Source: Calcarisporiella thermophila CBS 279.70
Taxonomy: Eukaryota > Fungi > Calcarisporiellomycota
DNA length: 64,000 nucleotides
NCBI RefSeq assembly: GCF_041956535.1
Contig: NW_027192193.1
Location: 28,792 to 92,791 of the forward strand
Direction: 5' to 3'
Made by a program: the position numbers and the translations under genes. Shown in pieces: positions 1,589 to 38,847 of this stretch (its first letter is position 1; every line of letters starts with the position of its first letter). The notes under the pieces were generated by a model. That model worked only from the letters and a program-made list of their open reading frames with translations, was not told where the DNA came from and did no database searches.

Positions 1589-3466
1589 ATGACCATCTCC
1601 ATTTCTGATATCAAATTCCGTATGTTCAAAGATCAAGACGAAATAAATGAATGAACGAACGGTTATGCAGTTAGTATTGGGTTTGAATGGAGGGTAGAGC
1701 ACTCAGATCTTACAACTGGATTCCTCACTGCTTTGACTATTTCATGTTCACGATCAGGCCAACACAGTTCGAATAACGAAATACCTATGAGAACCGTATC
1801 AACAGTGAAGTGCGATTGTCCTTTCATATTGCGATTTCGATTTTCAAAAGCCGTAAATGCTTATCGCGTTACCTCTGGTAATATCGAGCATAATCATCCT
1901 TTGGAGCCCGAAGATATCCGTTTTGCTCGCAGATTTCGTAGACCCGAACCTGAAACAGTTCAGTTTGCCCAGAACATTGTTCAATTTGAATGTGGTGTTT
2001 CTCTCGCAACCCATCTTTTTTGTAGCTAGGTTGTATCCATTCAGGCAAAGGATATCCATAATGCTTTAGTGACAATTACTAGAAGAGAAAAGGGTGAGCT
2101 GTCCGAAATTGCTGCCTTGTTGACCAATCTTGAGAATACAATCGAATATACCGTCAAATACGTATTGGAAAATGGCAAGTTGCAAAACATATTTTGGATG
2201 CGTAACTCGCATGTTTCACTTGCGGACAAGTGTCCTGAGGTCGTGATTGCTGATAGTACCTATCGTACCAACCACTTCAACCTTCCTTACTTGGTTTTAG
2301 TCGGTGTAGATGAAAATATCAAAACGCTTTTGATGGGAATTGCGCTACTAAAACGCGAATCTACCCATGTATTTACGTTGGCGCTCCAGCAATTAATAAC
2401 TTGTTTGAAAAGAGAATCAACTGAGAGTACACGAACAGTGATTAGCGATTCCGACCCAGCGTTCATAAGTGCTGTCCGTAATGGTATCCCACATGCTTAG
2501 CACCAGCTTTGTTCATGGCATATAACAAAGGATATACAAGTGCATTTGAGCCGGAAGGTTGAGAACTACAAAGACTTTGCAAAAGAGCTTACTAAGCTGT
2601 TAAGCTCACAGACACCAGACGAATTCAACAAGCATTACAATGAGATAATTAAAGCATACCCCAATACAGCAGTTTATCTGGTATAATCGTAGTGAAATGT
2701 GGGCAGAGGCATTTGTCTCGGATTACACTAATCTTGGCGTACATTCGATTCAGCGTGTAGAAGGGCAACATGCAGTTCTCAAGCGTTTCACCACCACTCA
2801 GGCCAGTCTTAGCAAACTCTTCGACTCTTTCGAGATACTTTTTAATGAGCAGGAAAAACATTGAGCTTTTTGTCTTTATCAAGCTAGAAAGCGACGCAAG
2901 CTTTATCCCCCACATCCATTCGGCAACTTGGAAGATAAAATCTCTGAATTCGCGATGGAAAAACTTATTGAACAATATCACCGTATAGAAGATTTCGATC
3001 TTGTCGAAAAAGATGGGTTATATTTGTTCAGCGGTAAAGATAGTTATTATAGCATTATAGCGGGCAGGAGAAGGTAGTAGTTAACCACCTTATTTTAATA
3101 TAGAAAAATACTATCCAATATCGCACAGCAGTCATATATCAGTCTGCGGCTGCAGCTCGGTAAAGCGATATCTTTTCCCGTGTGCCCACTTCTCTTTTTC
3201 GTAAAAAGCAAGGCAAGAATATGATCTATGAATCGGAGATAGCACAACGCTGGTTCATACCACCGCACAGATCTACCATATTGGAAAGCACTGAGCCGTC
3301 AAATTTTGAGCAGCAATCCTCTAAATCTCTGGAGCCTTGGGAAATTGCTAAAACGGGATTTCCAAAATTTGTGAACGACGTTGTGTTCACCTTGATTAAC
3401 CGTGCTATATCAACTGCTCAACAGCTTGTTCAACATCTTCCTAATAAACAGAATATTCTGATTTAA
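1589..3466 (+). pseudogene. Degenerate Mutator/MULE (FAR1-like) transposase
   Basis: Fragments give CSRSG..KCDCPF..HNHPL (WRKY/FAR1-type DNA-binding domain), DSTYRTNHFNLP..VGVD, VISDSDPA..HA*HQLCSWH (MULE DDE), and a SWIM-like CGC..PCAH remnant. Several in-frame stops and frameshifts; no TIRs found. Confidence 0.85.
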
Positions 3467-6028: not shown

Positions 6029-7933
6029 TTATATCACCTTACTATCTGCCAATATTGTGTCGGCTGATTTCAACCCCAGCATATGGACGAATAGCACTGG
6101 GAAATAGCCAGGGACAGCTGGGAAGATGGTAGCATCAACTACACGCAAGTTTTTCACACCACGGACACGGAATTTACCGTCTAGAATGGACATAGAATCA
6201 GAATCCGCTCCAAGATTAGCAGTACAGCATGCGTGATGGCCAAAAGTTTCTTTGCGCACAAAATTTTCAATTTCTTTGTCTGTATTGACATCAAAACCCG
6301 GCTGGACTTCTCTGTATCCACTAAGCAATAATTATTTCTTGGACTCTTCTCGGAGTAACCTAAGTTCTTGCGTGAAGTCCTTGATATCTTCATCACCATT
6401 CTTCGCAAAATAGTTGAAATTAATATCTGGCATATCGAAAGGATCGCCAGATGTTAAACGAACTACCCCCGGGTTAGATGTGTGAGCCTTGAGAATAATC
6501 TGAGTTACGCTATCAAAATTTTTCGGAATATCTTGCGAAAAGCCAACGTAGAATTTAGGAAAATAGCCAGCAACAGTGTAAGTAAAGATGTCTAGCTCTC
6601 CACGATTAGGCTGAGATTTTCGTAGCACTCCTCCTATGACTTCATTGAATGTATACGGTCCGGTACTCTTATTGACATACTGATTATAGCAATAGTCATC
6701 CTGCGTAGCTTGAAGTTTGCAGTTCTTTAGAAGATTAAATATTCTAGGGAATTTGATGATATACGACGTTTCGTAATGGTCTTGGAGGTTGCTCGCAACT
6801 CCCGATAAGTGAACTTTTGCATCTCAAATAATCTTGATCCCCTATTCTACTCAGCATAAGTAATTGAGGAGTATTGAATGCGCCTGCGGAGACAATCACT
6901 TCGCACCGAGCTTTTACAATACCGCCAATGGCGTTTTGGCGATTTGCATTAGTAGAGAGTGGACTAGCTTTAAATAGGTACTTTCCCTGCTTATATTCAA
7001 CAGCCCGAGCTACTTTGTCATCGTCTATGATAACCCGGGTTGCAGATGTATTCGTCCAAATATCGAAATTTGAAAGTGAATTTGCAGTGTCGAGAATATA
7101 TCCAGCAAAATTGCCGCACTCCATTGTATTAGGATCCACATTCATTGGCACAAAAGCTGTTCCCTCTACACTATTTCCTAACGCGCCAGCAAAATAGAAG
7201 TTAAGATAGTGCTTTGGGTTTCCAACAAAAGCTAAGAACATATTATATAGCTAAAGTGATAAAATAGGAAGATGAGAGGTGAGCTTTGGGTTGAATGAAC
7301 ACTTGGTTAAAATTTTACTTGAAGATCAATGATCCGCAATAAATTGAGGCTTGCAAGGCCAACTAACTTCAGGGGATTGTAATAACTTATAGGGAACCAG
7401 CCGCTTTTCCCATGCAATCCGGGAGATGCTTTTAGTGGATAATAATTTCGTTCCGTGGTTTTGAAATACATTTCCCGCATATTAGACTCGCTGAATGTTT
7501 GATCGCCAGTTAGTCTCACAAGACTATCAAAATTCCTCTTGCTCGGATAGACAATATTCAATGCATTATGGATAGAACAGCCTCCAAACGCCCCTACTCG
7601 CGAATAGAACACTTTTCCTTGATATTGAGTTGAGTTCTCGATATATTTATTTGGGAAAAATGAGAACGAAATTGCTGGATCTTCGTCGGCATGAGTGTAA
7701 AATAAAGGCACAGTGACATTTTTATCAACGTGTGCTGGCCCCGCTTCCATCAATAATGTTGAAAATCCTGCTTTGGCAAGTTGTATCGCTACCAACCCGC
7801 CAGCAGATCCTCCTCCAACTATAATATAATCGTATTCTGCTGTATAATTGCTATTGATCCATGCTTGAGCATCGGCAGTGGTGATTAGGACAACAATAAT
7901 TAATGCTTTCAAAGTTCTTAGTATGTATTTCAT
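6029..7933 (-). pseudogene. Secreted GMC (glucose-methanol-choline) oxidoreductase, probably pseudogenised
   Basis: Signal peptide, YDYIIVGGGSAG FAD motif, EVIVSAGAFNTPQLLMLS, FGHHACCT, FRVRGVKNLRVVDATIFP. In-frame TAA at 6334-6332, frameshift near 6820, break near 7300. Confidence 0.8.
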
Positions 7934-8695
7934 AGTTTAAAGTATATTGAATTTTATTTTTAGCTCGATATTTACGTTCACGATTTATATTAAAATTTCT
8001 AGACATTGTATTTGCCAATCCAGGGATGGTTTCGAATAGCATATTTAAGAAAATTTTAGCGTAAATGGCAAACTAAACCTTTTTAACTAATTGCTTTACT
8101 TTAACCTTGAAAAACCTACATCCTATAAATCTTTAAAGGAACCTTGCTTGCTTCCTTGCTGAGCAGTTAGCCAAATATTTTATTCAAAACGCAACTTAAA
8201 TCTCCATATGAATTGCATATATCAAGTTTGATAAATACTTCGATTTTTAAATGATTGATTTCTTACCTGAAAATTGGACAAAAAGATATCAGGATCTCAG
8301 GGTTCTGGTTGCTGTAGACGCCAATAGGGCTTTTACAAAAATAATTTCAAATAACTATGACAAAAGGAATTTAAGAATTTAGCTTTTATTTTAGATTAGT
8401 TGAAGCCATTCAAATAATCCAAAATAGAAGCTAAAATAAAAGCTATGTGTTTTCGTCACTTGAAAATGTCTTAGTTTAACAATAAATTAGATCCTGACAT
8501 TTTATTATTGGTGTTCCATTATGAAATGAAACCTTATTTAATTCGCCTAGAATAAATGTAAATCTCAAAAATTTAAAAATTTCAGTTCTATGATATTATT
8601 AATATTGATATTATCTTAAATAAATATAAAGGTAATTATTAACATTAAATTAAAGATTAGACCCAAAAATGCAAATTTTGTGATAAGTTAATAAA

Positions 8696-14724: not shown

Positions 14725-15560
14725 TTAATCGTAGCCGTTTCTTAATAGCACCTCTGTCAACAAGTTACTTCGCTTTTCTTTTCCCAAAGCACGAGCACTT
14801 CTGTCATAATCCGTATTATAGGTCAATTCATCATCCATTTCTTCCAATATATTCCCCTCATCAACCTCCCACTCATCTCCAAAGGATTCAACAAAATTGT
14901 GCAGCATAATTCCACAATGTATCAGCCTACAATTACTCTCCATGCCCTTCAAGCGCAATGAATAGAATGCTGGGAAGCGGTTCTTGAGACGACCAATAGC
15001 TCTTTCAATAATATTTCTAATTTTACTTGAAAATATCGTATTGAATATTCTCTCTTGGCGATTTTGTGGAGATCGAAAAGGCGTGATGCAAAAAGGTGAA
15101 ATGGGATAAGCCGAGTCACCGATAATGTATTCGGGTGGATGCAGTAACACCTCATGTTGCCGAAAAAATTGAGAATTCACATAAACTTTAGCGCCATGGA
15201 CCGACCCAGGCCAGCCAATTTCATAGTCGATAAAGCGAAAATCCGAATCAACAATTAATTGAGCCTGAGCTGCATACTCTTTCTTTCGAGACCAATACGT
15301 TTCGGGATCCTTGCTAGGTGCGAAATTAAGACGAAAATGTGTCCCATCTATAATTCCTACTACATCTGGAAGGCCACTCATATCAAGGAACCTGTTTTTA
15401 ATCTCCTCCTTTCTTCTAGTATTTGGCCAGGTAACATATTCGGGGCGTAGTGATTCAATCGCGAGGGTAATTCGTTTTGTGACTTTGATGACAGTACCTT
15501 CTGCGATCGGATATTTTGAGGCTAAATCGAAAACATCATTGCCATTGGAAAGCCTACACT
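14725..15560 (-). pseudogene. Harbinger (HARBI1/DDE_Tnp_4) transposase, N-terminus lost
   Basis: GIIDGTH, YWSRKKEY, GWPGSVH(G), IIGDSAYP, RNIIERAIGRLKNRF. Upstream sequence is LINE-derived. Confidence 0.88.
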
Positions 15561-16563
15561 TTCGCCTTTCGATTTTAAAGGACATCCACCCATTGTGAGG
15601 TAAGAGCTGTTGTTTATGGGGAGAGAGAGCGTTTCTTCAATGTTGAATTTCTGGGTGAGATCTAATTTGCCGTCCAGACTTCTCCATACTCTCAGTAGGT
15701 GAGACCATATTCCATCTGTTCGGATGAGTTTGCGTTGTGTGTACTGCGTTGCCAGAATACCCATTCCTATTCCAGCTGGAGCGTAGAACTTTTCGAACAT
15801 TTGTATAGTGAGTTGTACCCAAATTGGGCGGATTCCAGTAGACATTGCAGTAGCCATTCTTTGAAACCACGTGGCCAGTATCGCGTCAGTTTGATACTTC
15901 GGGTTAATGAGTCCCAGGCCTTGTCCTGATGGTTGTTGGAGGATTTCCATAGATATCTATGGGCGCCTTCCTCCCCAGATAAAGCTCCTTATGATACTGT
16001 TCACGCACTTTAGGAATTTTGGTGGAGGAGGTATAAGTTGAGATATGTACCATAGTTTAGAGAGCAGGCGGAAGTTTACAAGATGGACTTTTCCTATCAG
16101 TGATAGTGATCTCGTTTTCCATGATTCGACGGTCTTTTGTAACTTGGCTCTCAGTTCTTCGAAGTAGCTTTCCCTCGGGAAGATGCTCTTCGTGCTAAAG
16201 GGTATTCCTAGCAGAGTGAAGGATTCCTCTTCCTGTATATAGCGGCATGGTAGTTGTAGGTGCATCCTTGTGAGTTGGCTTAAGGGGACTGCTTCCGATT
16301 TCTGGCAATTGACTTTGGAGTTGGAAGTTCGCTGGAATCTGTCTATTACCTCGAACAGTGTGTCGGCGTCTCGTTGATCAGCTACTGCCACCGTGATATC
16401 ATCCGCAAAGGCTGTTGTTACAATACTCGGAATGTTGGGTATCTTTATTCCGCTGATCACGCTCCTTAGTTTGATTAGGAGTGGCTCTATGGCTATATTG
16501 TATAGGAGTGGAGAAAGTGGATCCCTTTGTCTTACCCCTTGATTAACTGGGAATGTGGTCCTC
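15560..16563 (-). mobile_element. L1/Tx1-clade non-LTR retrotransposon ORF2 fragment (RT C-terminal half)
   Basis: GVRQRDPLSPLLYNIAIEPL, AFADDITV, SKVNCQKS, LLGIP, W..RSLSLIGKVHLVN, FIWGG*..QGLGL, with an in-frame stop at 15959-15957. Confidence 0.85.
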
Positions 16564-18639: not shown

Positions 18640-18964
18640 TGAAGTTAATGTCAATGGACTTAACATAACGAGATATAGGTCCTGGATCGATAGACGTTCA
18701 ATCGATATGCGTGTATCGTAGTTGACGTGAATAGCATGTACGTGAAACCAATGTAATCGTTGTACTTATCGTAAGGGCGATCTTTTTAATAATCAAGACT
18801 CAGCTTCTGATCAAGTGGATAGCAGTCACAAACTAAGAGTAAGTGCTGGTGGGGGAAGTGGGATTCGAACCCACGCCGTTGACTTAAGATAGTAATCGGA
18901 TAAGCGTGATACGTACATTATCTCAACACCTCCCAACCTTCCACACAACAATTCAACAGAACGA

Positions 18965-19036
18965 TCCGAATTGGTCCAGTGGCTAGGATTTCCCGCTCTC
19001 ACCGGGACGGCCGGGGTTCGATTCCCCGATTCGGAG
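18965..19036 (+). tRNA. tRNA-Glu (anticodon CTC)
   Basis: Full cloverleaf: acceptor TCCGAAT/ATTCGGA, anticodon stem TCCCG/CGGGA with loop CTCTCAC, T arm CGGGG-TTCGATT-CCCCG. Followed by a T6 Pol III terminator. Confidence 0.96.
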
Positions 19037-19415
19037 TAGTTTTTTGCGTTTTTCTCATTATTTTTTGATGTTTTTCTCCCCTGGAAGGGCATAAGGACGT
19101 TCCCCTCGTCGAGAGGAACCGATTGATACCCTTTTTGTGGGGAGTTTCTGCAATTTTTGCGGAATGATCGTAGATGATGAGAAAATCGACGCTGATGATG
19201 GCGATGGTGACTCCGCCAAAACAGCTCCGAATGTCACGGGAACGGTTCAACAGGGACCACTGATGTGTCCTGACCTCGTGGGGACAGGATCTCTCCGCCA
19301 TCCGAGCTGTACGCGGTTCATCTGAGGCTCGGAGACATGGAGCCTTCATTCACATGATGAGGCATCGAGCGACGACGAACCAGACCAGAGAGCACCACCA
19401 GGCGTTGCGCCAAGT
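19014..19415 (+). repeat. ~400 bp direct repeat, copy X1 (tRNA-Glu 3' part plus non-autonomous retroelement-like sequence)
   Basis: Highly similar over its whole length to 25526-25927. Confidence 0.9.
19040..19045 (+). terminator. Pol III oligo-T terminator of tRNA-Glu
   Basis: TTTTTT three bases after the discriminator. Confidence 0.75.
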
Positions 19416-19694
19416 CCCAACTAATGCGAGCGAGAACGCGAGGACCACGTAAGGCGCGTTGCCGCACTGTCTAATAGTGTGGAGACGCGGGGGACACCCC
19501 CGCGTACCCCCATTATTAACAGAAACCCTGCGGACCGGCTATGGAGGAGAATGGCAAAGGTGGAGACTGAGTCAGAGTCAACACGACCGTTGACGTGGGA
19601 TGCTAGCCGCCACAGGATAGCCACGCACGACAATCCGGTATCGACGCTATATGGAGAGGAAGGCACCTCTCACCGGGACGTATTACCCCAACTT

Positions 19695-20431
19695 NNNNNN
19701 NNNNNNNNNNNNNNNNNNNNNNNNNNNNNNNNNNNNNNNNNNNNNNNNNNNNNNNNNNNNNNNNNNNNNNNNNNNNNNNNNNNNNNNNNNNNNNNNNNNN
19801 NNNNNNNNNNNNNNNNNNNNNNNNNNNNNNNNNNNNNNNNNNNNNNNNNNNNNNNNNNNNNNNNNNNNNNNNNNNNNNNNNNNNNNNNNNNNNNNNNNNN
19901 NNNNNNNNNNNNNNNNNNNNNNNNNNNNNNNNNNNNNNNNNNNNNNNNNNNNNNNNNNNNNNNNNNNNNNNNNNNNNNNNNNNNNNNNNNNNNNNNNNNN
20001 NNNNNNNNNNNNNNNNNNNNNNNNNNNNNNNNNNNNNNNNNNNNNNNNNNNNNNNNNNNNNNNNNNNNNNNNNNNNNNNNNNNNNNNNNNNNNNNNNNNN
20101 NNNNNNNNNNNNNNNNNNNNNNNNNNNNNNNNNNNNNNNNNNNNNNNNNNNNNNNNNNNNNNNNNNNNNNNNNNNNNNNNNNNNNNNNNNNNNNNNNNNN
20201 NNNNNNNNNNNNNNNNNNNNNNNNNNNNNNNNNNNNNNNNNNNNNNNNNNNNNNNNNNNNNNNNNNNNNNNNNNNNNNNNNNNNNNNNNNNNNNNNNNNN
20301 NNNNNNNNNNNNNNNNNNNNNNNNNNNNNNNNNNNNNNNNNNNNNNNNNNNNNNNNNNNNNNNNNNNNNNNNNNNNNNNNNNNNNNNNNNNNNNNNNNNN
20401 NNNNNNNNNNNNNNNNNNNNNNNNNNNNNNN
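19695..20431. other. Assembly gap (N run)
   Basis: Run of N characters. Confidence 1.
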
Positions 20432-20440
20432 GATTCGGAG

Positions 20441-23400
20441 TAGTTTTTTCGTTTTTTCTACTTCTTTTTTGCTCCTTGCACGCGTCCGATGCCTCCAAAC
20501 GATCCCCCCAACTGCGACGCATCATTTGATACCCGTTTGGCCAGTGTACGACAAGTTTTCGACGAGTTGGATCGCGATGACGAGATTGCGGGCTCAGATG
20601 AGCGCGAGCACATTGATGCCAGCACTGACCCAAACGAGGAGATAGACCGCGTCCCAAAAACCCCTCCCCCCAGGTCCCCACATGTCCTCCCCTCGAGCGA
20701 TTTGGGCGCACCCATCCCTTGCAGCCAGCGCCGCAACCTCATCAGTGATGATGACCGCTCCGTGGCGCAGCAACGCGAAACGCGACCCACCCTCGACGAC
20801 TCACAGAGGCGCAGCTCCCAATCCCATGTCATCGTCTCCAAGGCGAGAGCCACGGCCAGCGTCCACTGCCCGGCTCCAGACTGCGAATACTGGGGCTTTG
20901 TGCCGAGGACAATCACTCGCCACTACCAGCAGACCCATGGAGGCACTCTAGACTTCCAATGGACCTGCTCGGAGCCCGGTTGCAATCAAGTATCCTGCAG
21001 CCAACAGAAGATATGGGATCACGAACAGGAGCAACACAACCTGCCCTGCTTCGGAACGCCTCCTCTCCACCCATCCGATGTCCCTACAGGAACAAGGATC
21101 TTGGACTACCGCGTCCCGACCAACGCATCCCGCTTCCCATGCCCCTTTACAGACCAATGCTCGCATTCGTCAGCGAGGTGCGACGTGCTGACAAAACACG
21201 TGGAGACTATTCACAACGTCACCATCCGCCAGGTATGGCTCCGCCCTAGACCATATTGTCCCTACGAAACCACAGAGAAGAGGATCGTGATGAAGCACGT
21301 AAAATATGAGTGCCGAGCCAGGGACACGGGAAGCAACCCAATCGTCGAGCCGCCCCCAGCTCAGCCCGATACATGCCCAGGATGTCGCCTCGAAACAGGA
21401 TCTTCCATCGAGCTGCGCAAACACATGCGCATACACCCTGGCCTCACAAACCTAGAGAGCGGAAGGCTATTCGGCCCACTCTCTGAGCAGGACCAGATGC
21501 TGGTGGAGCAAGCGATTGGCGACGTTGGTTACGAGATAGTAGACGTGGTCCACTACCTACGACTCCACCGAACGTGGAGAAGCCCAGCAAGGATCCAGGA
21601 GGCTGTACGGAAGGTAGCCAGTCGCCCACTGAACCAAAGGTTTCCTCACATGAAGGTGCCACAAAATGATACGACCAGATCCATTACGGAGGTCAACTTT
21701 TCATTCTGGCCCATCGTTCACGGAACCAGAAGAACAGAGCGAACTACCCTAACCCCGACGACGAAGAAACCACAGAGACACCCGACCCATACGTCCCAAG
21801 CACAGAGACGAGGGAAGACCCGCAAGAGGAGGCAAACGAGCCACCACTACGACCTCCTCCTCCCATAACTACAAGCTCCTGATATCAACTACGAGTGCCC
21901 CTCTTCAGGAACAAGGAGAATCGAGATCAAGCAGAGAAACTGATCGACGCCATAGTCCGGCGCCATTTGGTACGAGACTCGGACTCCTGGGACACAGTAG
22001 AAAGGAAAGATGCTGGACTTCGAGATGCGCTATGGCAATGCATCCAGGAACTAACAAGTCCACAGAGCCAACGCGGGGAAGAACAAGGGGAAAGGGCACT
22101 CAGAGCGCAAGACACGGAAAGAGATATCACCGCAGAACTAAGGGATCCGAGGCTTCCACGACGCGAACAGAGGCGGCTTCTGCGACAACGGGCAGAACAG
22201 CGCCAAGAAAATGGCTCCCTGTACTTCCAACGGAAATACCAGCACAGACCAAAACAGGTTTTCGAAGAACTAACGGACAAACCACGCTCGCCTCCATGTC
22301 CAATACCGTGTACAAGTCTAGAGGAAACTTTCCGGACGAGATACGCAGAGGACCAAAACGGAACACTCCCTCCACTAAGCCCACGAACGACCCAAGAAGC
22401 AACAGAAATCAGCCAAACCGAGATCCCGGAAGAGGTGGTCCCGGAAACACAGGAGATCTGCCACACAGCCCCGGCCCCAAACGAAGCTGGAGAAGTCGAC
22501 CGGGTGACCGATGAGAACAGCACAGAGGAGCAAGACAGAGGATGGCGCCTCCGAGAGCCCACGATAGAATCGGTGGAAACCAGATTGAGCGCTCTCAACC
22601 AAACCTCTAGTGCAGGCCCAGATGGCATTACCTATGCGATCTGGAAACTCTTCCCGTCATTGACAACATGGCTGGAGGCAATCTTCCGAAAATGCTTCCA
22701 AGAGGCACGGATCCCAGCCCAATGGCGGATCTCCAAAACAATACTCCTGCTAAAGAAGCCGACAGCTGACCCTCTAGACATTGGCAACTGGAGGCCTGTG
22801 AGTCTGATCACAGTCGGAAGAAGAACACAGTCGGAAAGCTATACTTGAGCGTTCTGAACCACTGCATCCGAGAGACATGTTCCACACACCGGCTCCTCTC
22901 TGTGAACCAGAAAGGATTCATGCCCGTGTCGGGCTGCATAGAACATGACTTTACCATCCACACATACATCAGGCAGGCTCGCCGCAAAAGCCGAGACATC
23001 TACATTGTAAGTTACGACTTCAAAGATGCCTTCGGAGCATTAGACCACTCCATAATCCGACAGGCGATAAATGGACTGGGGTTCATTGAAATAGCCCAAC
23101 GTCAGATCATGAGTATGTACGAAGATATCGGCTTCTGGGTGGAATCGACCGAAGGATGCACCCCAATCATCCCACAAAAACACGGAGTGAAACAGGGGGA
23201 TCCCAGCTCACCCTTGATCTTCAACTTGTTCCTGGAATATCTATCCCGTAAACTCAATCGCATCACCACCACCCCAAACATCCCGACTAAGCACCTGCTT
23301 TTGGCCGACAACCTCATCACCATTGCCGACAACCCGAGCACATGCCAAGCACTGCATGAAGAGGTAGTGGAGTTCTGTCACATGACTGGAATAGAGATCC

Positions 23401-25525
23401 AGGCTCGCAAATGTCACCTCCTAGCGAATCAAGCAGCTGGGAAAGTGAAACGTACGGTGGACAGGTCCTTAAAGCTCACCATTCAAGATATCGACATCCC
23501 TACGATCAAGGCGAGAGATTCATTCAAATACCTCGGGAACAAAGTAGGCATGCAACGCAACGGAATCTACGGCCAATTCCACGAGATGCTCAAAGACACC
23601 GAAACAGTGCTGATGAAGGTGGCCGACTCCCCACTGCGAATCCACCAGAAACATCACGCGATTCGCACATTCGTAATACCGAAATGGGAATACTTTGTTC
23701 AACTCAACGGATTGGGGGTTCACCACGCCAAACTCCTTGGACAAGCACTCAGGACGGCGATTCGCAAGTACTGCAAGCTGCCCACACATGCCTCGATGGC
23801 GTTCTTCCACACCGACAGAGAGAACGGAGGCCTCGGCATGCCGGATCCATGGACATGGGCGTGCTCCACACAAGCAGTACACGTGGCGGAACTACTGAAC
23901 TCCAAGGACCCGACGGTTCGCAAGCTCGTGGTGGACTCAATCAGAAGTATCATCGAAGCCCGGTACCCAGGTGTACCGCATACGATGGAGGAACACACGC
24001 TGGTCATGTCCTATCTGGGAGGCAGTTTGGAACATCTTAAACAAGGAAACTACATAGACTGCTTCGACCTCATTGCGCACGTCCCACGGGCCATCAAAGC
24101 GACAAGGATGAAGATTACGTACCATACATATAAAGGCTACGAAGTAGTCCCTAACAACCCCCCACAGGTAGCGGAGAATCAACCCGGCACGGAAAGAGAA
24201 ATAAAATGGCCCAGAACGCTAACAAAGGTCGCAAGGGTGAAAGCGGCATGCCGACAGCATATCGCGGAACACTGGGCCTCACAACCGCAGCAAGGTCACG
24301 CACTAGCTACACTGAGAAACCCCCACTCCAACGCGTGGCTGACCAACAGCGACCTATACCCGGCTGCATATCGATTTGCCGTCAAGGCCAGGCTGGACCT
24401 TCTCCCTCACAACAGGAACAAACAGAGATGGAAACAACGAGACACTGCAGATTGCCCCCACTGTGGAAGGATGGAGACCACCCACCATATCCTATCCGTC
24501 TGCCCTAGATACCGGCCCATCCGCACCGAACGGCACGACAAGATAGCGGAGCGCCTTGCGAGAACAGCAAGGTATAACCACCCCGACTGCGAAGTGTTCG
24601 TTAACCAATCACCACCAGATATCCAAGCGGACCAACTACGGCCAGACCTGGTTATCGTGAACAGAACGCTAAAACAGGTCAAAATCCTGGACGTTGCCGT
24701 TACCGCCCAGTGCGACGACCAATGTTTAAACGAGAAACGAGAGGAGAAGGTCACCAAATATACCGCCATTAATCAGCAATATGAAGACCTAGGCTTCAGC
24801 ACTAGACTCGACGCAGTGGTGTTTGGAGACCTCGGAGGATCAGACACACGGAATACAACCATTTTCACGCAGATCCTAAAGTCGCCGAGATCTTATGCAG
24901 ACAAGATGCACCGCTTTATCGTCGCCGACATCCTACGTGCCGGTCAAAGAATCTGGGCTCAACGTAGCAACCTCTCTCTCCCGGCAGTAAACAACAACAG
25001 ATACATCGCCGACAGTAGAGACACAGCGCGAAATGTTGCTCCGACTACACAAGACATCGTACAAGCGACCCCAGTGACCCAAATCAACCGATTAATCGAA
25101 GACATCCGACACGGCAGAGAATAACAAAATAATAATAGAAAAAAAAAAATAAAAATAAAAAATAACAAAAAAAAACCAAAAAAAAACATAAAATACAATG
25201 AAGTTAATATTTTATTCCAATAACTAAAATAAGTTCCGCTTTACTCTATAGTATCATATTTTAACCCTATTATAATGTTAGTATTCTTTTTCTTCTCAGT
25301 ACTTTTCCCTTATATTCACTGTTTTCCATCTCATATATCTGATATTGTGGAGACGCGGGGGAAACCCCCGCGGACCCCCATCATTATTATAATTTATCTT
25401 ATTTCCTTTCTTTTCTTTGCTTTTTACTCTTTTACGCGCCCGCACCTCCAAGTGTTGTGCTTTAGTATTGAGACTTATTATTGCTTCTTCTCTGTCAATC
25501 AATACAAACGAAATAAAAATATTAT
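20441..25525 (+). mobile_element. RLE-type (NeSL/Utopia/R2-like) site-specific non-LTR retrotransposon, near full length, inactivated
   Basis: One original ORF from 20489 to 25124: several N-terminal C2H2-like zinc fingers; RT (SSAGPDGI, NWRPVSL, NQKGFMP..GCIEH, DFKDAF, GVKQGDPSSP, LADN, FKYLG); CCHC knuckle CPHC..HILSVC; RHD; RPDLVI..ILDV..KVTKY endonuclease. A-rich 3' UTR; bounded on both sides by tRNA-Glu 3' sequence. Confidence 0.92.
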
Positions 25526-25927
25526 GGGTTCGATTCCCTGATTCGAAGTAGTTTTTTGCATATTTCTTATTATTTTATTGATGTTTTTCTCCTCTTGAAG
25601 GGCATAGGGACGTTCCCCTCGTCGTGAGGAACCGATTGATACCTTTTTTGTGGGGAGTTTCTGCAATTTTTGCGGAATGATCGAAGATGATGAGAAAATC
25701 GACGCTGATGATGGCCATAGTGACTCCGCCAATACAGCTCCGAATGTCACGGGAATGGTTCAGCAGGGACCACTGATGCGTCCTGACCTCGTGGGGACAG
25801 GATCTCTCCGCCATCCGAGTTGTATGCGGTTCATCTGAGGCTCGGAGACATGGGGCCCTCATTCACTTGATGAGGCATCTAGCGACGACGAACCAGACCA
25901 GAGAGCACCACAGGCGCTGCGCCAAGT
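25526..25927 (+). repeat. Direct repeat copy X2, starting with a tRNA-Glu 3' fragment (T arm, acceptor 3' strand, terminator)
   Basis: GGGTTCGATTCCCTGATTCGAAGTAGTTTTTTG versus intact GGGTTCGATTCCCCGATTCGGAGTAGTTTTTTG; downstream matches 19046-19415. Confidence 0.9.
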
Positions 25928-27046
25928 TCAGAATCTCCCGCCCTTAAACGTAGGATTCAAAGACCACCGTTTGAATAAGACAGTCGAGCCAGGATGCTAG
26001 TGAAGGCTAATTTACGACGCAACTGTTTACGACAACTAGCGATTCCCCAGACAATCCGATGTTCGAAGTACCGTCTACTTAGTCGGAAAAAAATTAGTAC
26101 GGCCATAATGGTAGAGGGATTTTTCGTGTTAGCAATATAACGTTGCTGCACCCTTTGTTATACGTTCGACCTCGAGATCTTGACCAACCTTTAGCTATCT
26201 TCGCCAAGCCGACAAAGCGCACTCATGAGTTCCCGGAAAGCAGACTTCCTCTTCACTGTTGTCCATCTACCTGCCGAAATGACACTTCGATCTGAGCAAA
26301 ACCTTGACTAGACCAACATCCTCTTGCTATAGTTGTCTCTGATGTCACGAGGCCTTTACTCATGACTTGGCTACAACCTCTATTTACCAATGGCCATTTC
26401 ATCCGGCGACAAAGAACCAGACCAGAGAGCAGCAAATGGCGCTGCGCCAATTTACGGAGGTGGCACCACAACAGGGCCTAGATTAAGTGGTTATTTGTAC
26501 ATACACCGCGTGGTGGCCAGGTAGACCGAATTCGTCTATAGGAGGCTCAGCAGCTCGAGCCAACTGCCGACCGACGCCACTGGCTATCACCCGTGTTCCT
26601 GCGTCCCCGCGGGGGCTAGGATAGAGTCGGACGCATCAGGATAACAAAAGCTGGTACCAGACACCATGGACAAAACACAATTGGGAACAAGTCTAAAGGG
26701 CCTCTCAGGGAACCTCCCTACCGAAGATTCTATTTCGCCCGAAGGGAAGCACTGTGAGGACATAGCGAGCCTTGCACCCTACTTCCATCCACCTTCCCTC
26801 TTTGGAAGATGTCGAAAATGAGTTGAGTCGTGCTGACGAGGTGATACTGTGCCATTGCCAGGCTCAAATACTTAGTTTAATATCAATCTGGTTCCTGCTA
26901 GAAAAAAGTCAAAATAATTTTCTGCTACGAAATATTATACACTTTACTCAAGAAATAAGCTCTGCAATTTATTAACTTTTGAAATATTAACAAAGTTATA
27001 ACTGGTTTTGTAAATAAAATAGCAAAAGGAGTCAATTATAGACTTC

Positions 27047-32232: not shown

Positions 32233-35200
32233 ATGGAGTCCAATAATAAGATTAACGTGGCCATTAGAGTGCGGCCATTAAATGACCGTGAACTTCAAAA
32301 CGACCAAAAGATAGCATGGAGAGTACAAAATAATACAATAATACAGGGAAATTTGAATGATGAACGGCCAATTCTCGGCTCAACCTATACCTTTGGTGAG
32401 TTATCAGTTTTGATTGAATTATCTCGTTTGCGGTTGAAACAAGAAAATTATTTTTTTACGCGTTAATTGTACATGAATTGCTAATTGTTATCTATTTGTA
32501 CTTTTCCAATAACAGATAAGATCTTCTGGGGGGAGGTGAAGAATGAGCAAGTACATGCATCAATAGCTCGCAATATTATACTTTCTTCAATGGCAGGAAT
32601 GAATGGTATTATTTCTTTTATATTTTATTTGTGTTCTGATTAAAGGGTAAATTCATCTCAATTTAGGAACAATATTTGCATATGGACAAACCTCTTCAGG
32701 GAAAACGGTAGGCTATTTTATTATATTTGTTTGTTTAAACATTATTAAAGTGATTTACGCGTATTGATAGTATACAATGCATGGAACCAAAGAAGAACCA
32801 GGCATAATTCCTTTAGCAATTCGAGATATTTTCCAATATATTATGAATGTAAGTTAACTTTTCACTATGTGTGTATTCAGAATGATAGTTTTTTATTTCA
32901 TCGTGCACAGACGCCAGACCGTGAATTTCTGCTGCGAGTATCATATTTGGAGATTTATAACGAAGTAATCCGTGATTTGATTAATCCTGAGAACGATAAC
33001 CTGAAAATCAAGGAAAGCCCAAACGTGAGTTTTAATATTTTATGTTGAATTATTCATATCTATCTCATTTGTAAACGGTATTTTGTATCCAGAGAGAGAT
33101 CTTTGTCGGCAACCTTACTGAGAAAATAGTCCTCTCCGCAAAAGATGTTCTTTCAATCTTGCAGCGCGGTGAGAGTAACCGACACGTCGGTGAAACAAAT
33201 ATGAATGAGCGAAGTAGTCGCTCACATACAATCTTTCGCATGGTATTAATTGCAATAATTACATTCTATTATCTTATTTTGATTCATACAATTTTTTTTA
33301 CCTATTGATAGATTATTGAAAGTCGCGAACGCAACCGAAAGACTGACCAGAAGAAGCAATCCTACACCGGCGCAGTCAAAGTCTCTTGCTTAGTAAATAT
33401 TAGATTGAAAAAAATTATACTTTTGTATACCTATTCACTGAATCCAAATTATATACTCTTTTTTATATGTAGAATCTGGTAGATCTAGCAGGTTCTGAGC
33501 GCGTTGGGCAAACAGGTGCTGAAGGCATTCGGCTTAAGGAGGGCGGCCATATCAATAAGAGCTTGTTAACACTCGGAACTGTAATTGCGAAACTTTCAGA
33601 GTACGGTAGTGACAGGTATTTTGGCTTGTGAATTCGAAGTTTTCTTTAATTAACAATCTAATTTTATGTATAGGGGTCATATTCCTTATCGTGATTCTAA
33701 GCTCACTCGAATCCTTCAACCTTCCCTTGGCGGTAATGCACGTACGGCAATTATCTGTACGATCTCACCAGCCAGTGGATACACAGATGAAACGTTAAGC
33801 ACATTAAAGTTTGCTAGTCGTGCCAAGAATATTGAGAATCAACCTGAAATTAACGAGGTGCTTTCTGAAGAAGCACTACTTAAGAAATACCGACGTGAAA
33901 TTAGCAATTTGAAACGCCAATTAGACGAGGTAAAGCCCAATTTATTTTTAACTACTGACGACCATAGACACCGGCTAAAGTTCATTTTATATAGGCAAAT
34001 AATAAACAGAATGATGAGAATCGGGCAAATAAACGCAAGCGTATAGATAAGGTATGGTTTGTCTTTGATTAGATACCGAAGTAACTTATTCCTTAGCCTC
34101 CATATTAACTTCTTTTCCTTATACTAGGAGTCAGAGAAATTAAGAGAGGAAAAGGAGCAGGAGCGTTTGCGATATGAAGAGCTAAAACGTATGATATTGC
34201 ATTCATCACGAGTCGAAACAGGTGCTGTACAAGAAGAGATCCGTCGTCAAACATGGCACCCTGGGATGGCTGAGCAAAGCGCTACATCTTCAGCTATAAC
34301 TCAAGCTAGTCGAAAACGAAAATCGAATTGCTCCACTCAGTCTACTACAGGCGAGGTCGAGGAAGAGTCAATTCCATTGCTTGCCGCTAAGCGCCAGCTT
34401 GAAACTCAAAAGGAAAAGATTAAAGAAATCGAGCGGGTGGCAGGCGAAAAGGGGTCCGAAGCCGAGTTAGCCAAACATAAGCTTGAGATTCAGACAGCCA
34501 GAGCAGAAGAGCTAGCACAAAAAGTTGCCGAGATGGAGACAGAAGCAGAAACCGTCAAGCATGAGCTCGAGTCTCAAAGCATCAAAATGAAAGAACTCTA
34601 TCAGATCATTTCCGAAAAGGATGCCCAACTGAAAGACCTCGAAAGTTCTATCGCAGAGAAAAATGCGGAATCTGAAGCAATAAGAGCTGAGCTCGAAGCA
34701 CAATCAATTAAAGTATTAGACCTCTCTAATACTATAGCTGAAACCGAGTCTCATGTGAAATCACTCGAAAATAATGTCCACACGAAGACCATTGAAGCAG
34801 AGGAGGCCAAGCGTAAACTCGAAGAGAATAACTTCGCGTTGATTGAGCTTTCCCAGGAGATTTCCAGAAAGGATACCCAAATGAAGTCATTAGAGCTTGA
34901 GGTTCAGCAAAAAAACGATCAGGCTAACGCAACCCAACGTGACCTCGAGGAGCAGATGACCAAACTGAACGAACTTAGGGATATTCTTTCCGAAAAGTGT
35001 GGCCAGATACAATCACTAGAGCGGGACTTGTCTGATAAAAATGCCCAGGCTGAATCGACTAAGCGAGAACTAGAAGAACAAGTTCGTAGAGTGGAAGAAT
35101 TGTTGCAAGAGCTCAACGAAAAAACTTCTCAAATGACAATATTGAAGAATGAAGTTTCCGAGAAGGATTCTCTGGTTGGAGCGGTCAAGCTTGAGCTTGA

Positions 35201-38200
35201 AGAGAAAGCATCCAAATTGGGTGGGCTATCGCAGGTTCTTAGCGAAAAAGAAGACCAGATAAAGGCGCTTGAGCACGCGATTGTCGAAAAAGATGCAGAA
35301 GGTGAAGCCCAGAGACTCGAGATTGAATCACAAACGGTCAGGGTCGAAGAGCTAGTTCAGAAACTTTCTGAAAAAGACTCCCTAATGAAGACATTCGAAC
35401 TGGATATCGTTGCGAAGACCTCAGAGATAGAAGAGGTCAAGCGTGAGCTTGAAGTACAGTTGGAAAAGATGAGTAAGCTCGATAGGATATCGTCAGAAAA
35501 AGATGCCCAGATTGAAACGCTCCAATGTATAATCGCAGAACGAGAAGCTGAACTGAAATCCCTTGAGACAACGGTTAATGAGAGAGAGATCGAAGCCAAA
35601 CAGCTGTTATCTGCGCAGGCTGAAAAAGATTCTGAAATGGAGCTATTGAAGAGGCGTACAGAAGAACTCTCGACGGCTCTAGAAGTCTCCACTCATCAAC
35701 TCCAAGAGCTTGTGCAAAAAGCTGAGGAAAGAGAGAAGACCTGGTCACGTGAAAAATCAGAGCTAGAAGCACGCCTTATCGAGTCGGAAGCCAACTTTGT
35801 AGCAGCAAAGGAAAATACAGAACAATTGGTAGTGGTTAATGATTCTACAATTCGAAATCTCCAAGAACGTATCATCGAACTGGAAGAGCAACAAGTTCAA
35901 TTGGTATCTGAGAAGGAAGGTCTTGAAAAAGCTATTGTCGAGAAGGATGCTGAAGCAGAAGTGTTAAACAAGCAAGCTGAAGAGCTCCGGCTAGAATACG
36001 CCGTCACCCAAGATATGCTTCGAGATTACAATTTGGAGGCCGAAAAGAGACAGATTTTATGGGCATCAGAAAAAGATGAATTGCAAACCCACGTCGTAAA
36101 GATAGAGTCAGAGAATGCGGACTTAAGGATAAAAGTGGAGGCAATGTTGAACGAAGTCAGCGATTTCCAAAGTAAACTTCAAGATCAAGCGCTTGTGATG
36201 CAACAAAAAGATGAAGAAATCGCCGGCCTACGAGCTCAGATGACCGAGTCAACACACGCGCTCCAAATCGCCCTAAGCGAACTGGAAACGAAGAGGAACC
36301 AGGTTGACAAGCTTGACTACGCTAAAGCTGAATTAGAGAAGCATATTCAATTGCTCGAGACGAAGATTAGCGAGAAGGAAGCCATGTTTGAGGCAGCTGT
36401 CTCGGAAAGAGATGTGACTCTAGGACTCAAGCTACAGGAGTTCGAGAGTCTGGTATCAAGACTAACGGAAGAGAAGGCTGCACTCGAGAATGCAGTTGCG
36501 GAAAATGAATCTAAGCTCCAGTTGATTATCTCCGAGAAAGATGCGCTTCTCGAGGCAACTGTTGCTGATAAGCATTTAGCTCTTTCGAATAAGGCAGCGG
36601 AGGTAGAATCATTGACTGTACAGCTTGCTGAGGAGAAAGAATCCACACAACAAATTAGGAAGCAATATGAAGAGGCCAAAGGAGAGTGCGCTACTCTTGG
36701 GAAACAATATGAAGAGCTTCAAGATAAATGCAAGAAGTTAGAGTGCATGATGGAAAATCTCGAGAATGTTTTGTGGATGTCGGAGGAGGAGATATGCAAT
36801 GGGTTAAGCAAACTTGACCGCTTGGAGGCCCAGAAGAAGGGTGTTGAAGCAGAGCTGTCCGCGACCTCGACTCGAATCAAAGAGCTGGAAGAGCAACTTG
36901 TAGCGTCCAAACATGAACTCTCAGAGGAGAAATTCTGGAGCGAGCGAGTTCGATGCGAAGCGGACGCCATTTCAAAGTGGTACGAGGAGGAGAAATCAAA
37001 AAGAGAAGCAGCTGAAGAGCGCATCAAAGAATTCCCTGACCTTCAGAATCGTGTGGATGAACTTGCCACATCCAATGCAGAGCTCCGTAAACACTTGGAA
37101 GATGCTGAACGACGGGCCATGGAATTTGAAGAGAGCAAGGCTGCAGCCGTATCTGAAATGAATGGGCTCATCGCTGAGCTCAAGCACGCACAAGGGCTCT
37201 TGTCAATGAAAACCGTTGAAACTGAGGCACGTAGTGCCGAAATTGCTAACCTCTGGCGTCGAGCTGAAGAATTGGCCGAGGCGAATGCGGATCTTCACGG
37301 GCGATTGGAAAAAGCTGGACAACAAGTTGCAGAGCTTGAGGAGGGCAAAGTTACTGCCAATTCTCAACTGAATAGCCTTACCTTGGAACTGAAAACGACG
37401 AGAGAACAATTGGAGGCAAAATCACTGGAGGTCAATGCACTGGCAACTAAGCTGGCTGACTTGGAGATCGCTTTCAATGAAATTCAAGTTAACTTCTCGC
37501 AATGCGAACAAGAGCGTGATAGACTGTCTAGCTATGTACCCGATCTCGACACTGAGCTTCAACAGACGCGTAACCTTCTGGAGACAAAAATTGCAGAATC
37601 AGGCATCTTGGAGTCTAAATTATCAGAGGCAGAGATTGAGATGGCAAAGATGCAGGAAAAATTGGCTCAGAACGACCGAGAGCGAGAGAATATTATGCAG
37701 GAGTTGCCCGGTCTCACTTTGGAATTGCAACAGACCCGAGACCACTTGGCTTCGAAGTCTCTCGAGATCGAGGAGATGAACAGGAAATTAGCGGAAGCAA
37801 GTGTAACCATTGAGGATTTACAAACGCGGCTCGCTACAAGTGAACGGGAACGAGAACAGTTGATTGCAGAAGTACCTGATCTCGCCATTGAGCTAAGGCA
37901 GGTGCGGGAAGAGTTGGCTGCTAAGTCAGCTGAACTAGAGACGCTCCATCTGCAACGATCTGAAACAGAAATAGCCATGAGAGAAGCAAACGATCAACTC
38001 ATACCGGCTGAGAGTGAACCAGGAGACCTAGCTTCTGGAGGGTTAGATCTAAGCAGTGAGCTCGCACGTGCGCAAGGTCTTCTGTCGTCAAATACCACAG
38101 AAACGAATACCCTGGAGACCAAGATTAGCGAGATGGAAGAGTTAGTCGCCGAGCTCAGAGCGCGTATTGCCCAACATGAAAATGAACGAGAACAGATGGA

Positions 38201-38847
38201 GTCGGACTTGAGAAACGCGCGCCATAAATTGGAGAAGCTTTCAAAATACAAGCAAGACTATTCCACGATATCGCACTCATTCAATGAGATGCAGACGTCG
38301 TTGCAAAACATGGAGGTCTTATGTGAGGAGAAGATCGCAAGTGAGGAGCAAATGCGTCAAGCTCTTGACACCATTATGCAAGAGAAAGAGGTCTTGATGG
38401 CCAGGCTAAAGGACGCAGAGAAGGCTGCAGAGGATGCAAAGGCTGCGGTTGCAGGTGCTTTGAAAGAGAAGTCAATGCTTGAAAAGTCGATAGCGGAGAT
38501 GGCAACCGAAGAAAAGACATCCAAACGTCAATTCGCCTTGAAAGATATCACCAACGAGAAGAATATTGCCCCAGTAAATGAAAAGAAGGTTTCTGAGAAG
38601 AAGTATGAGAACAAGCGTTCCGCTCCGGTGGATGAAACGAAGCACGAAGAAATTGAGAATGTGAAGGTAACCATTCTAAGCATTCGTTGTCCTTTAGTTT
38701 CTTGCATCTAACCACCTTCATGTTGTTTGTATCTCCCCTCAGACTGTACGTAATCGTAGGTTGCAAGCACGAATGGCTCGTCGAGCAAATGCCGCAGCCG
38801 CACAAGCAAACAAGACCACCTCGCCCGAGGAATGTAATAACCAATAG
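32233..38847 (+). CDS. Kinesin-7 / CENP-E-like motor with ~1500 aa coiled coil, multi-exon
   Basis: [63 protein letters not shown]. Last exon 38743-38847 ends ...EECNNQ*. Confidence 0.9.

What the first reader, a model, noticed from the sequence alone, without database searches (positions are those of the whole stretch)
18965..25927. Candidate tRNA-Glu-specific RLE retrotransposon in a fungus that inserts in the T arm yet leaves the tRNA intact
Seen: the RLE element is preceded by the tRNA-Glu 3' end and terminator (GATTCGGAG TAG TTTTTT, 20432-20449). It is followed directly by tRNA positions 51-73 plus terminator (25526-25557), starting at the B-box GGGTTCGA. A complete tRNA-Glu heads the array. 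Established: RLE non-LTR elements (R2, NeSL, Utopia, R4, CRE) are sequence-specific and usually disrupt their multicopy RNA-gene target. Inference: bottom-strand nicking near tRNA position 50/51, plus either a ~30 bp TSD or an element-borne tRNA 3' end, regenerates a full tRNA upstream of each insertion. That makes the target reusable and builds head-to-tail arrays, analogous to bacterial integrative elements that restore tRNA 3' ends. I do not know of such a fungal element, but cannot search to confirm novelty.
Basis: partly seen in the sequence, partly recalled or inferred. Interest (0 to 1): 0.9.

Follow-up and report, generated by a model that had tools for sequence, protein, structure and literature searches.

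The report
tRNA-Glu-targeting retrotransposon that regenerates its target
In the fungus Calcarisporiella thermophila, decayed R2-like jumping genes sit in head-to-tail rows behind every detectable tRNA-Glu gene; they entered inside the tRNA's T arm, yet each copy is preceded by a duplicate of the tRNA's 3' end plus a terminator, so the gene stays whole.

Summary
Window 20450-25525 is a decayed non-LTR retrotransposon ("B") with a restriction-like endonuclease (RLE). It is followed by tRNA-Glu nt 51-73 and preceded by the tRNA 3' end plus TAGTTTTTT. An intact tRNA-Glu(CTC) heads the array, which also holds two non-coding relatives, X1 and X2.

- **Target occupancy.** All five detectable tRNA-Glu genes in this 28 Mb assembly are intact, and each is followed by TAGTTTTTT plus an element leader.
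- **3' junction.** At four further loci of this genome, and in six other assemblies or metagenomes including Mucor saturninus and a scorpion, related elements end just 5' of GGTTCGA of a tRNA.
- **Clade.** Five of these proteins form a clade with SH-aLRT 100.
- **Contrast case.** One relative splits a tRNA-Glu cleanly, with no duplication. The regenerating layout is therefore a specialisation, not a property of the whole clade.
- **Terminator.** It is carried by the element, because the outermost fragments of arrays carry other trailers.

Whether the 22-23 nt duplication comes from staggered nicks (favoured) or from the element RNA is unresolved. The assembly gap could not be closed because no sequencing runs were listed. 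No intact copy is visible here.

RLE elements specific for tRNA genes are already published (Kojima and Jurka 2015), but at other tRNA positions. I rate this a new variant of a known kind. First-stage notes of this scan had flagged the same stretch.

The parts
18965..19036 (+). Intact tRNA-Glu(CTC) gene at the head of the array
   Evidence: ARAGORN; Rfam tRNA 58 bits. It is one of only five tRNA-Glu genes found in the assembly.
19037..19045 (+). TAGTTTTTT trailer, a Pol III terminator, read as the 5' terminus of the element downstream
   Evidence: Identical at all nine visible 5' junctions in the genome.
19046..19694 (+). X1, a non-coding relative of B, cut off by the assembly gap
   Evidence: Leader is similar to the B leader. 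A 49-nt stretch with a GC hairpin (about 19470-19518) is shared with the B 3' UTR at 90%. Copies lie behind the tRNA-Glu genes on C5, C11 and C23.
19695..20431 (.). Assembly gap of estimated length
   Evidence: Run of N. No sequencing run was listed. ORFs that cross it are artefacts.
20432..20449 (+). Last 9 nt of a tRNA-Glu copy plus TAGTTTTTT, directly upstream of B
   Evidence: Identical to 19028-19045.
20450..25525 (+). B, a decayed autonomous RLE non-LTR retrotransposon of 5076 bp
   Evidence: RVT_1; zinc-finger array and RLE motifs. A second partial copy lies at C9:904232 (96% identity over aligned columns). Closest relatives are 39-44% identical.
20489..21868 (+). First ORF piece: N-terminal C2H2 zinc-finger array and a Myb-like segment
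   Evidence: Translation; weak zf-H2C2_5 hit. A 31-nt indel relative to the C9 copy at about 21741 shifts the frame.
21895..22848 (+). Second ORF piece: linker and start of the RT; ends at a frameshift
   Evidence: A 17-nt insertion containing a 10-nt duplicated word lies within 22809-22839, inside the conserved motif of the RT N-terminal region.
22845..25124 (+). Third ORF piece: RT, CCHC finger and PD-(D/E)XK nuclease; the RT active site reads ADN, not ADD
   Evidence: Alignment A1: the four relatives have ADD, the window copy has ADN at 23304-23315. The nuclease residues are invariant.
25125..25525 (+). 3' UTR with a GC hairpin (25352-25372) and a conserved terminus ending in TATTAT
   Evidence: The last 20 nt or so are shared with X2, Y and the C12 element. 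An AATAAA-like word lies just before the junction in all relatives.
25526..25548 (+). tRNA-Glu nt 51-73, target-derived, 2 mismatches
25549..25557 (+). TAGTTTTTT, the 5' terminus of X2
25558..26850 (+). X2, a second non-coding relative; ends without a tRNA fragment
   Evidence: 94% identical to X1 over the first 370 nt. Collinear with the C5 copy beyond 25927. The 3' end is missing here; the C62 and C15 copies keep it.

Best explanation
B is a dead copy of a site-specific non-LTR retrotransposon of the R2/NeSL type. Its protein has an N-terminal zinc-finger array, a reverse transcriptase and a C-terminal restriction-like endonuclease. It belongs to a distinct clade whose members enter the T arm of tRNA genes.

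**Shown**
- The 3' end of each element abuts tRNA nt 51 or 52, just 5' of GGTTCGA.
- Each element begins right after a complete tRNA 3' end plus a short trailer and T-run.
- Consequently the tRNA gene upstream is whole, and a promoter-less fragment (nt 51/52-73) is left downstream.

**Inferred**
- The endonuclease nicks the bottom strand opposite nt 50/51 to 51/52 and primes reverse transcription from the conserved 3' terminus of the element RNA.
- The top strand is cut about 22 nt further on, at the end of the tRNA. This gives a 22-23 bp target-site duplication.
- The first nucleotides of the element (TAGTTTTTT and further T-runs) supply a Pol III terminator for the regenerated gene.
- The regenerated tRNA is a fresh target. 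New copies enter at the head and push older ones outward, which builds mixed arrays of autonomous (B) and non-autonomous (X, Y) elements.

In C. thermophila the target is tRNA-Glu, and every detectable tRNA-Glu gene heads such an array.
For: **Protein**
- RVT_1.
- The CCHC and RPD-D-K residues are invariant in alignment A1.
- The best solved relatives are R2 proteins at E 1e-51, against 1e-23 for LINE-1.

**3' junctions in this genome**
- Window, C62 (two junctions), C15 and C12.

**3' junctions elsewhere**
- L038, L039, L040, L041, L042, Mucor saturninus L132 and Centruroides vittatus L136.
- Five tRNA-flanked proteins form a clade with SH-aLRT 100.

**Insertion really lies inside the tRNA**
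- L052 shows tRNA-Glu(TTC) nt 1-51 fused directly to the 5' end of an element. Its near-identical copy L038 gives the matching 3' junction.

**Regeneration**
- The five tRNA-Glu 5' halves in the genome all lie in intact genes with unrelated upstream flanks. All are followed by TAGTTTTTT plus a leader.

**Terminator carried by the element**
- Nine of nine 5' junctions are identical, spanning four leader types.
- The outermost trailers differ (C12, C62, the 3' side of L041).
- Similar trailers occur in L132 and L041.

**Fragment comes from the target**
- The T-loop variant GACTCC occurs in the C109 gene ahead of a Y-type element, and in the C15 fragment ahead of an X-type element.

**Order of insertion**
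- Fragments decay with distance from the head. In the window the counts are 0 then 2 mismatches. On C62 they are 0 then at least 6.

**Specificity**
- About 85 other T arms share the 11-mer GGTTCGATTCC (95 hits, 9 in the control). Element ends were found only at Glu-type sequences.
Against: - No copy in this assembly is intact: B has two frameshifts and ADN for ADD. Activity and cleavage sites are inferred from junctions only.
- The gap hides the X1/B junction, and several other arrays also abut gaps.
- Copy number is small, about a dozen junctions.
- Two X copies (window, about 26850, and C23) end with no tRNA fragment. The C12 copy has no tRNA 5' half upstream. Deletions or other processes have therefore reshaped the arrays.
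- The staggered-nick step is not separated from the alternative in which the element RNA carries the tRNA segment. The relative without any duplication (L052) fits that alternative at least as well.
- Expression of the head tRNAs was not tested.
- Gaps may hide further tRNA-Glu genes.
Confidence: 0.75

Rival explanations
1. Same element and same target site, but there is no long target-site duplication. The tRNA segment nt 52-73 plus trailer is the element's own 5' terminus, transcribed and reverse-transcribed with it. Both strands are cut at nt 51/52, as in the relative that splits the gene. Joining the element's 5' end to tRNA nt 1-51 rebuilds the gene.
For: - L052/L038 shows a clean insertion with no duplication and no terminator. 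A single capture of 'tRNA 3' end plus natural-looking trailer' would therefore explain both new features with no change in cleavage.
- The trailer is conserved together with the fragment in three fungal sources.
- No 5'-truncated copy lies behind an intact tRNA (0 of 9).
Against: - The segment matches each host's own tRNA: Glu variants within this genome, other Glu sequences in Mucor and L041, Asp in the scorpion. That match is automatic for a duplication but needs repeated recapture or co-evolution for a carried segment.
- The GACTCC variant is shared by X- and Y-associated fragments.
- Related RLE families are known to differ in duplication length: 0 against 20 bp in Utopia (PMC4640811), and an 'exceptionally long' duplication in R9, per the title of a reference cited in PMC5035012.
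Confidence: 0.3
2. The duplication is about 31-32 bp and includes the native trailer. TAGTTTTTT would then be the natural trailer of every tRNA-Glu locus.
For: The duplicated block in the window reads identically through TAGTTTTTT on both sides of B.
Against: - Five loci with unrelated upstream flanks would all need the same 9-nt native trailer.
- The outermost fragments on C12 and C62 and the 3' side of L041 carry other trailers.
- In L041 the 22-nt fragments are identical but the trailers differ immediately after them.
Confidence: 0.07
3. The tRNA-like pieces are not target remnants. Either they are a tRNA-like 3' tail of the elements, which land downstream of tRNA genes, or the pattern comes from local segmental duplication or misassembly.
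For: - In a tandem array the phase of the repeat unit cannot be read from the array alone.
- Several arrays abut assembly gaps.
Against: - L052 shows a tRNA 5' half fused to an element 5' end.
- Arrays mix different families (X1, B, X2; X2, Y), so they are not simple duplications.
- The same junction recurs at five loci here and in six other assemblies or metagenomes made by different methods.
- Fragments follow host tRNA variants.
Confidence: 0.04

Closest known systems
tRNA-gene-specific RLE elements of the NeSL group: NeSL-1_TV (tRNA-Pro), LIN15_SM (tRNA-Arg), LIN25_SM (tRNA-Glu). Kojima and Jurka 2015, PMC4640811
   Same: RLE-type non-LTR retrotransposons that insert at a fixed position inside tRNA genes, one of them in tRNA-Glu.
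   Different: - The hosts are Trichomonas and a planarian, not fungi.
- In that paper's supplement the LIN25_SM junction lies near the 5' end of the tRNA, and only one of four listed copies is flanked by it.
- No regeneration of the gene and no T-arm site is described there.
Utopia (U2 snRNA-specific RLE elements)
   Same: - Among the next-nearest proteins (about 30% identity) is one flanked by the 5' part of U2 snRNA (L046).
- Utopia families differ in duplication length, 0 against 20 bp (PMC4640811), which is a precedent for the variation seen here.
   Different: The target is U2 snRNA. The tRNA group is a separate, long-stemmed clade.
R2 (28S rDNA-specific)
   Same: - Domain order is the same: zinc fingers and Myb, RT, CCHC, RLE.
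- R2 proteins are the best solved-structure matches.
- Both use target-primed reverse transcription at a conserved multicopy RNA gene.
   Different: - R2 interrupts the 28S gene and inactivates that unit.
- No R2-type ribozyme or 3' UTR family was detected here.
R9 of rotifers and SLACS/CRE of trypanosomes (RLE elements with long target duplications)
   Same: Long duplications of the target made by staggered nicks. For R9 the basis is the title of a reference cited in PMC5035012. For SLACS it is my recollection of a 49-bp duplication.
   Different: I know of no report that the duplication rebuilds a complete functional gene with a terminator supplied by the element.
Bacterial integrative elements and phages that integrate into tRNA genes
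   Same: The functional outcome is the same: the mobile DNA brings or duplicates the tRNA 3' end, so the gene survives integration.
   Different: They use a tyrosine integrase and attP/attB recombination. There is no reverse transcription. This is an analogy only.

Membership tests
RLE-type (R2/NeSL/CRE group) non-LTR retrotransposon | Reverse transcriptase domain of the non-LTR type | tested here: met
   Pfam RVT_1 at E 6.7e-21. R2 proteins are the best solved matches for the intact relative P0130.
RLE-type (R2/NeSL/CRE group) non-LTR retrotransposon | C-terminal CCHC finger followed by a PD-(D/E)XK nuclease motif; no N-terminal AP endonuclease | tested here: met
   Residues C537, C540, H548, C553, R599-P600-D601, D616 and K635 are invariant in alignment A1. 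No endonuclease family other than this appears in the Pfam scans.
RLE-type (R2/NeSL/CRE group) non-LTR retrotransposon | Sequence-specific insertion with a fixed 3' junction | tested here: met
   Twelve junctions, all at tRNA nt 50/51 to 51/52.
NeSL/Utopia group, as opposed to the R2, R4, CRE or HERO clades | Placement within that group on an RT tree that includes named reference sequences | not testable with these tools
   No Repbase references were available. The only anchor is a U2-flanked neighbour at about 30% identity.
R2 in the strict sense | Insertion at the conserved 28S rDNA site | tested here: not met
   The flanks are tRNA sequence, not rDNA.
tRNA-derived SINE (considered for X1 and X2 together with the tRNA) | The tRNA-like head acts as an internal Pol III promoter and reads into the body without a terminator | tested here: not met
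   T6 follows the tRNA directly, and further T5-T6 runs follow within 40 nt. The tRNA is a canonical gene, not a degenerate head.
Active element in this genome | An intact ORF with catalytic residues | tested here: not met
   Frameshifts at about 21741 and 22819-22835, and ADN for ADD. The other copies are fragments.

The most novel reading that the evidence does not exclude
This is an unrecognised clade of RLE retrotransposons, present in Mucoromycota fungi and at least one arthropod. It has evolved a non-destructive way of using an essential gene as a landing site. Members cut the tRNA T arm, duplicate the 3' part and supply their own Pol III terminator, so the target is rebuilt and can be used again. 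In C. thermophila the whole tRNA-Glu gene family now runs on terminators supplied by the elements. Such enzymes would be natural 'safe-harbour' integrators that spare their target.
Probability: 0.55. Interest if true: 0.8.

Novelty: new variant of a known kind. Interest (0 to 1): 0.7.

Why it matters
Site-specific RLE elements are usually described as tolerated because their multicopy targets are redundant, so each insertion costs one gene copy. Here the insertion appears to cost nothing, which would explain how all five tRNA-Glu genes of a genome can be occupied.

- **Testable contrast.** Within one clade there are gene-splitting members (L052/L038) and gene-regenerating members (C. thermophila, Mucor saturninus, L041, the scorpion). 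This can be used to study how second-strand cleavage or 5' end formation evolves in RLE elements.
- **Engineering relevance.** R2-based transgene insertion is under active development. tRNA genes are small, conserved, multicopy targets.
- **Host biology.** It raises the question of whether the host depends on terminators supplied by the elements.

Tried and rejected
- **Closing the gap with reads.** The look-up of sequencing runs listed none.
- **Relatives of the N-terminal piece.** The search returned only this fungus's own two gene models.
- **JGI metagenome scan.** It gave 80 loci, of which only one (L052) belongs to the clade.
- **Listing all tRNAs with the Rfam tRNA family.** Only 63 of 1459 candidates were scored, so it could not enumerate tRNA-Glu genes. 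Patterns were used instead.
- **Ribozyme or R2 3' UTR families.** Nothing was found in 18800-26900 apart from the tRNA.
- **My first 3'-junction pattern.** It was badly phased and missed C62 and C15.
- **Other relatives.** Contigs of P0135 and P0138 (30-32% identity) show no tRNA at their ends. P0132 is a lone element on C8 with no tRNA fragment within 900 nt. The Apophysomyces contig (L137) holds no junction.
- **RT tree with named clades.** Not possible, because no Repbase sequences were available.
- **X1/X2 as a native downstream flank of tRNA-Glu.** Rejected. The B, X and Y leaders differ after TAGTTTTTT, the B leader contains its ORF start, and X1 shares a 3' UTR motif with B.
Full report
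**What is in the window**

ARAGORN finds one tRNA, tRNA-Glu(CTC), at 18965-19036. Rfam scores it at 58 bits. It is followed by these parts, in order:

- TAGTTTTTT at 19037-19045;
- a non-coding element, X1, at 19046-19694;
- the assembly gap at 19695-20431;
- the last 9 nt of the tRNA plus TAGTTTTTT at 20432-20449;
- a 5076-bp element, B, at 20450-25525;
- tRNA nt 51-73 (standard numbering) with two mismatches at 25526-25548;
- TAGTTTTTT again at 25549-25557;
- a second non-coding element, X2, which runs to about 26850 and not to 25927.

The 31-nt tRNA-end pattern occurs twice in the window against 0.00 expected from shuffles.

**The gap**

No public sequencing run was listed for this stretch, so continuity across the gap could not be tested and read laying was not used. 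The two sides are of different kinds: X1 on the left, a tRNA 3' end on the right. Nothing coding crosses the gap, and the ORFs listed across it are artefacts of N. Uninterrupted junctions of the same type elsewhere make the right-hand junction credible. Whether X1 and B are adjacent remains unknown.

**Element B**

B encodes three ORF pieces that together resemble one long protein.

- **Domains.** There are four or five C2H2 fingers and a Myb-like segment, an RT (RVT_1, E 6.7e-21), a CCHC finger and an RPD...D...K nuclease motif. The nuclease residues are invariant in alignment A1.
- **Decay.** A 31-nt indel relative to the C9 copy lies at about 21741. A 17-nt insertion within 22809-22839 breaks the conserved motif of the RT N-terminal region. 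The catalytic box reads ADN where all four relatives have ADD.
- **Other B-like sequence in the 28 Mb assembly.** These are a 1.3-kb 5' piece on C9 (96% identity over aligned columns), a 68% identical 5'-truncated copy on C12, and small fragments. No intact copy is visible.
- **Host.** It is Calcarisporiella thermophila (Mucoromycota): a window gene is 100% identical to VTP21DRAFT_6921.

**Genome-wide test of the target**

- A generic tRNA-Glu pattern and the specific 5' half each hit exactly five places: C3, C5 and C23 (CTC), and C11 and C109 (TTC).
- All five are intact genes.
- Their upstream flanks are unrelated right up to position 1. All are followed by TAGTTTTTT and an element leader: X type four times, and a third type, Y, on C109.
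- There are no orphan 5' halves.
- The 3' half occurs three more times within two mismatches as a fragment starting at nt 51 or 52 (window, C62, C15). More divergent fragments lie on C12 and at the outer end of the C62 array. Each is preceded by a conserved element terminus ending in TATTAT or TTTAT.
- The contig C62 shows a complete short element Y with both junctions.
- About 85 other T arms share the 11-mer GGTTCGATTCC. Element ends were found only at Glu-type sequences. Recognition must therefore extend beyond the B box.

**Relatives elsewhere**

An exhaustive protein search found a small set at 39-50% identity, and everything else at 32% or less. Every contig of the close set that reaches the element's 3' end stops at a tRNA T arm, just 5' of GGTTCGA. 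These are L038, L039, L040, L041 and L042, Mucor saturninus L132 and the scorpion Centruroides vittatus L136.

- **Targets.** The fragments are Glu-like in several cases, Asp-like in the scorpion, and of other tRNAs in L039 and L042.
- **Tree.** Five tRNA-flanked proteins form a clade with SH-aLRT 100 on a long stem. A neighbour at about 30% identity is flanked by U2 snRNA, which makes it Utopia-like.
- **Solved structures.** The best matches are R2 proteins.

**Two informative contrasts**

- **L041.** This is a full element with an intact 1634-aa ORF. It has identical 22-nt tRNA fragments on both sides, but the trailers differ: TACTTTTG upstream and CTTTTTTCG downstream.
- **L052.** This copy belongs to the same family as L038. 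It shows tRNA-Glu(TTC) nt 1-51 joined directly to the element's 5' end, with no duplicated 3' part and no terminator.

Insertion therefore truly lies inside the tRNA, and regeneration is a derived feature of some members. The regenerating layout, with tandem copies, recurs in Mucor saturninus (trailer TAGTTTTG) and in the scorpion.

**Mechanism**

Shown:
- the fixed 3' junction;
- the intact upstream gene;
- a terminator carried by the element (nine identical 5' junctions across four leader types, different trailers on the outermost fragments, and a similar trailer in two other sources);
- arrays built from different families;
- fragments that decay with distance from the head: 0 then 2 mismatches in the window, 0 then at least 6 on C62.

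Inferred:
- target-primed reverse transcription from a bottom-strand nick at nt 50/51 to 51/52;
- repeated entry at the head of the array.

Unresolved is whether nt 51/52-73 is a 22-23 bp duplication from staggered nicks or is carried at the 5' end of the element RNA.

- I favour the duplication at about 0.5. It matches each host's tRNA automatically. The GACTCC variant is shared by fragments next to X and Y elements. Related RLE families are known to differ in duplication length (PMC4640811; a reference cited in PMC5035012).
- The carried-segment model stands at about 0.3. It explains L052 with no change in cleavage.
- A duplication that includes the trailer is unlikely.

**Comparison with what is known**

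Kojima and Jurka (PMC4640811) report tRNA-specific RLE families: NeSL-1_TV, LIN15_SM and LIN25_SM. In their supplement the tRNA-Glu junction lies near the 5' end of the tRNA. Dada DNA transposons also target tRNA genes and disrupt them. Searches of the held literature found no fungal member, no T-arm site and no target regeneration. Repbase could not be consulted.

I rate this a new variant of a known kind. First-stage notes of this scan had already flagged the same stretch, and none had tested it.

**Unexplained**

- X2 in the window and the X copy on C23 end near the same internal point with no tRNA fragment.
- The C12 copy has no tRNA 5' half upstream.
- X elements are mosaics that switch partner after a recurring motif of about 40 nt.
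- X1 holds a 14-nt exact copy of the tRNA-Glu anticodon stem-loop just before the gap.

Noticed in passing
window 19667-19680: X1 contains a 14-nt exact copy of the tRNA-Glu anticodon stem and loop, just before the gap. The C11 copy has it with one change. A chance match of this length is roughly 3 in 10,000 by my estimate. It may be a relic of template switching onto the tRNA.
   Followed up: partly
window 19377-19415, 25890-25926, 26413-26450: A motif of about 40 nt that begins GAACCAGACCAGAGAG recurs. After each copy the X elements continue into different sequence, as if it were a recombination or template-switch point.
   Followed up: no
window about 26810-26850; L027 about 3040-3060 (C23): Two X copies end near the same internal point with no tRNA fragment. 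The insertion model does not predict this. It could be deletion or gene conversion.
   Followed up: partly
window 18847-18933, minus strand: A tRNA-like 3' half lies about 60-100 bp upstream of the tRNA-Glu, head-to-head with it (weak hit to the tRNA clan). It fits the SINE/LINE system that another report of this scan describes as targeting positions upstream of tRNA genes.
   Followed up: no
G000 C8:1046540-1048699 (L139, L140): A lone RLE element of another family (P0132, 45% identical to B, open frame). It is preceded by a 6-kb gap and has no tRNA fragment within 900 nt of its 3' end. It is single-copy, and its target is unknown.
   Followed up: partly
L136 7000-9300 (Centruroides vittatus): A scorpion genome holds tandem relatives. 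Each ends at nt 51/52 of a tRNA-Asp-like fragment, followed by a T8-9 run and the same leader. The layout is therefore not restricted to fungi. Horizontal transfer or contamination was not examined.
   Followed up: partly
L024 about 7000-8200 (C11), minus strand: Behind tRNA-Glu(TTC) and an X1-like copy lie a second degenerate X-like leader and zinc-finger ORF remnants. This suggests that X derives from a second autonomous family with a long 5' UTR.
   Followed up: partly
window 14725-15585, minus strand: An ORF with a DDE_Tnp_4 transposase domain of the PIF/Harbinger type (E 2.4e-28).
   Followed up: no
window 34167-38711: A 1514-aa ORF with strong A-over-T skew and only weak coiled-coil hits. 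It is not a retrotransposon by Pfam.
   Followed up: no
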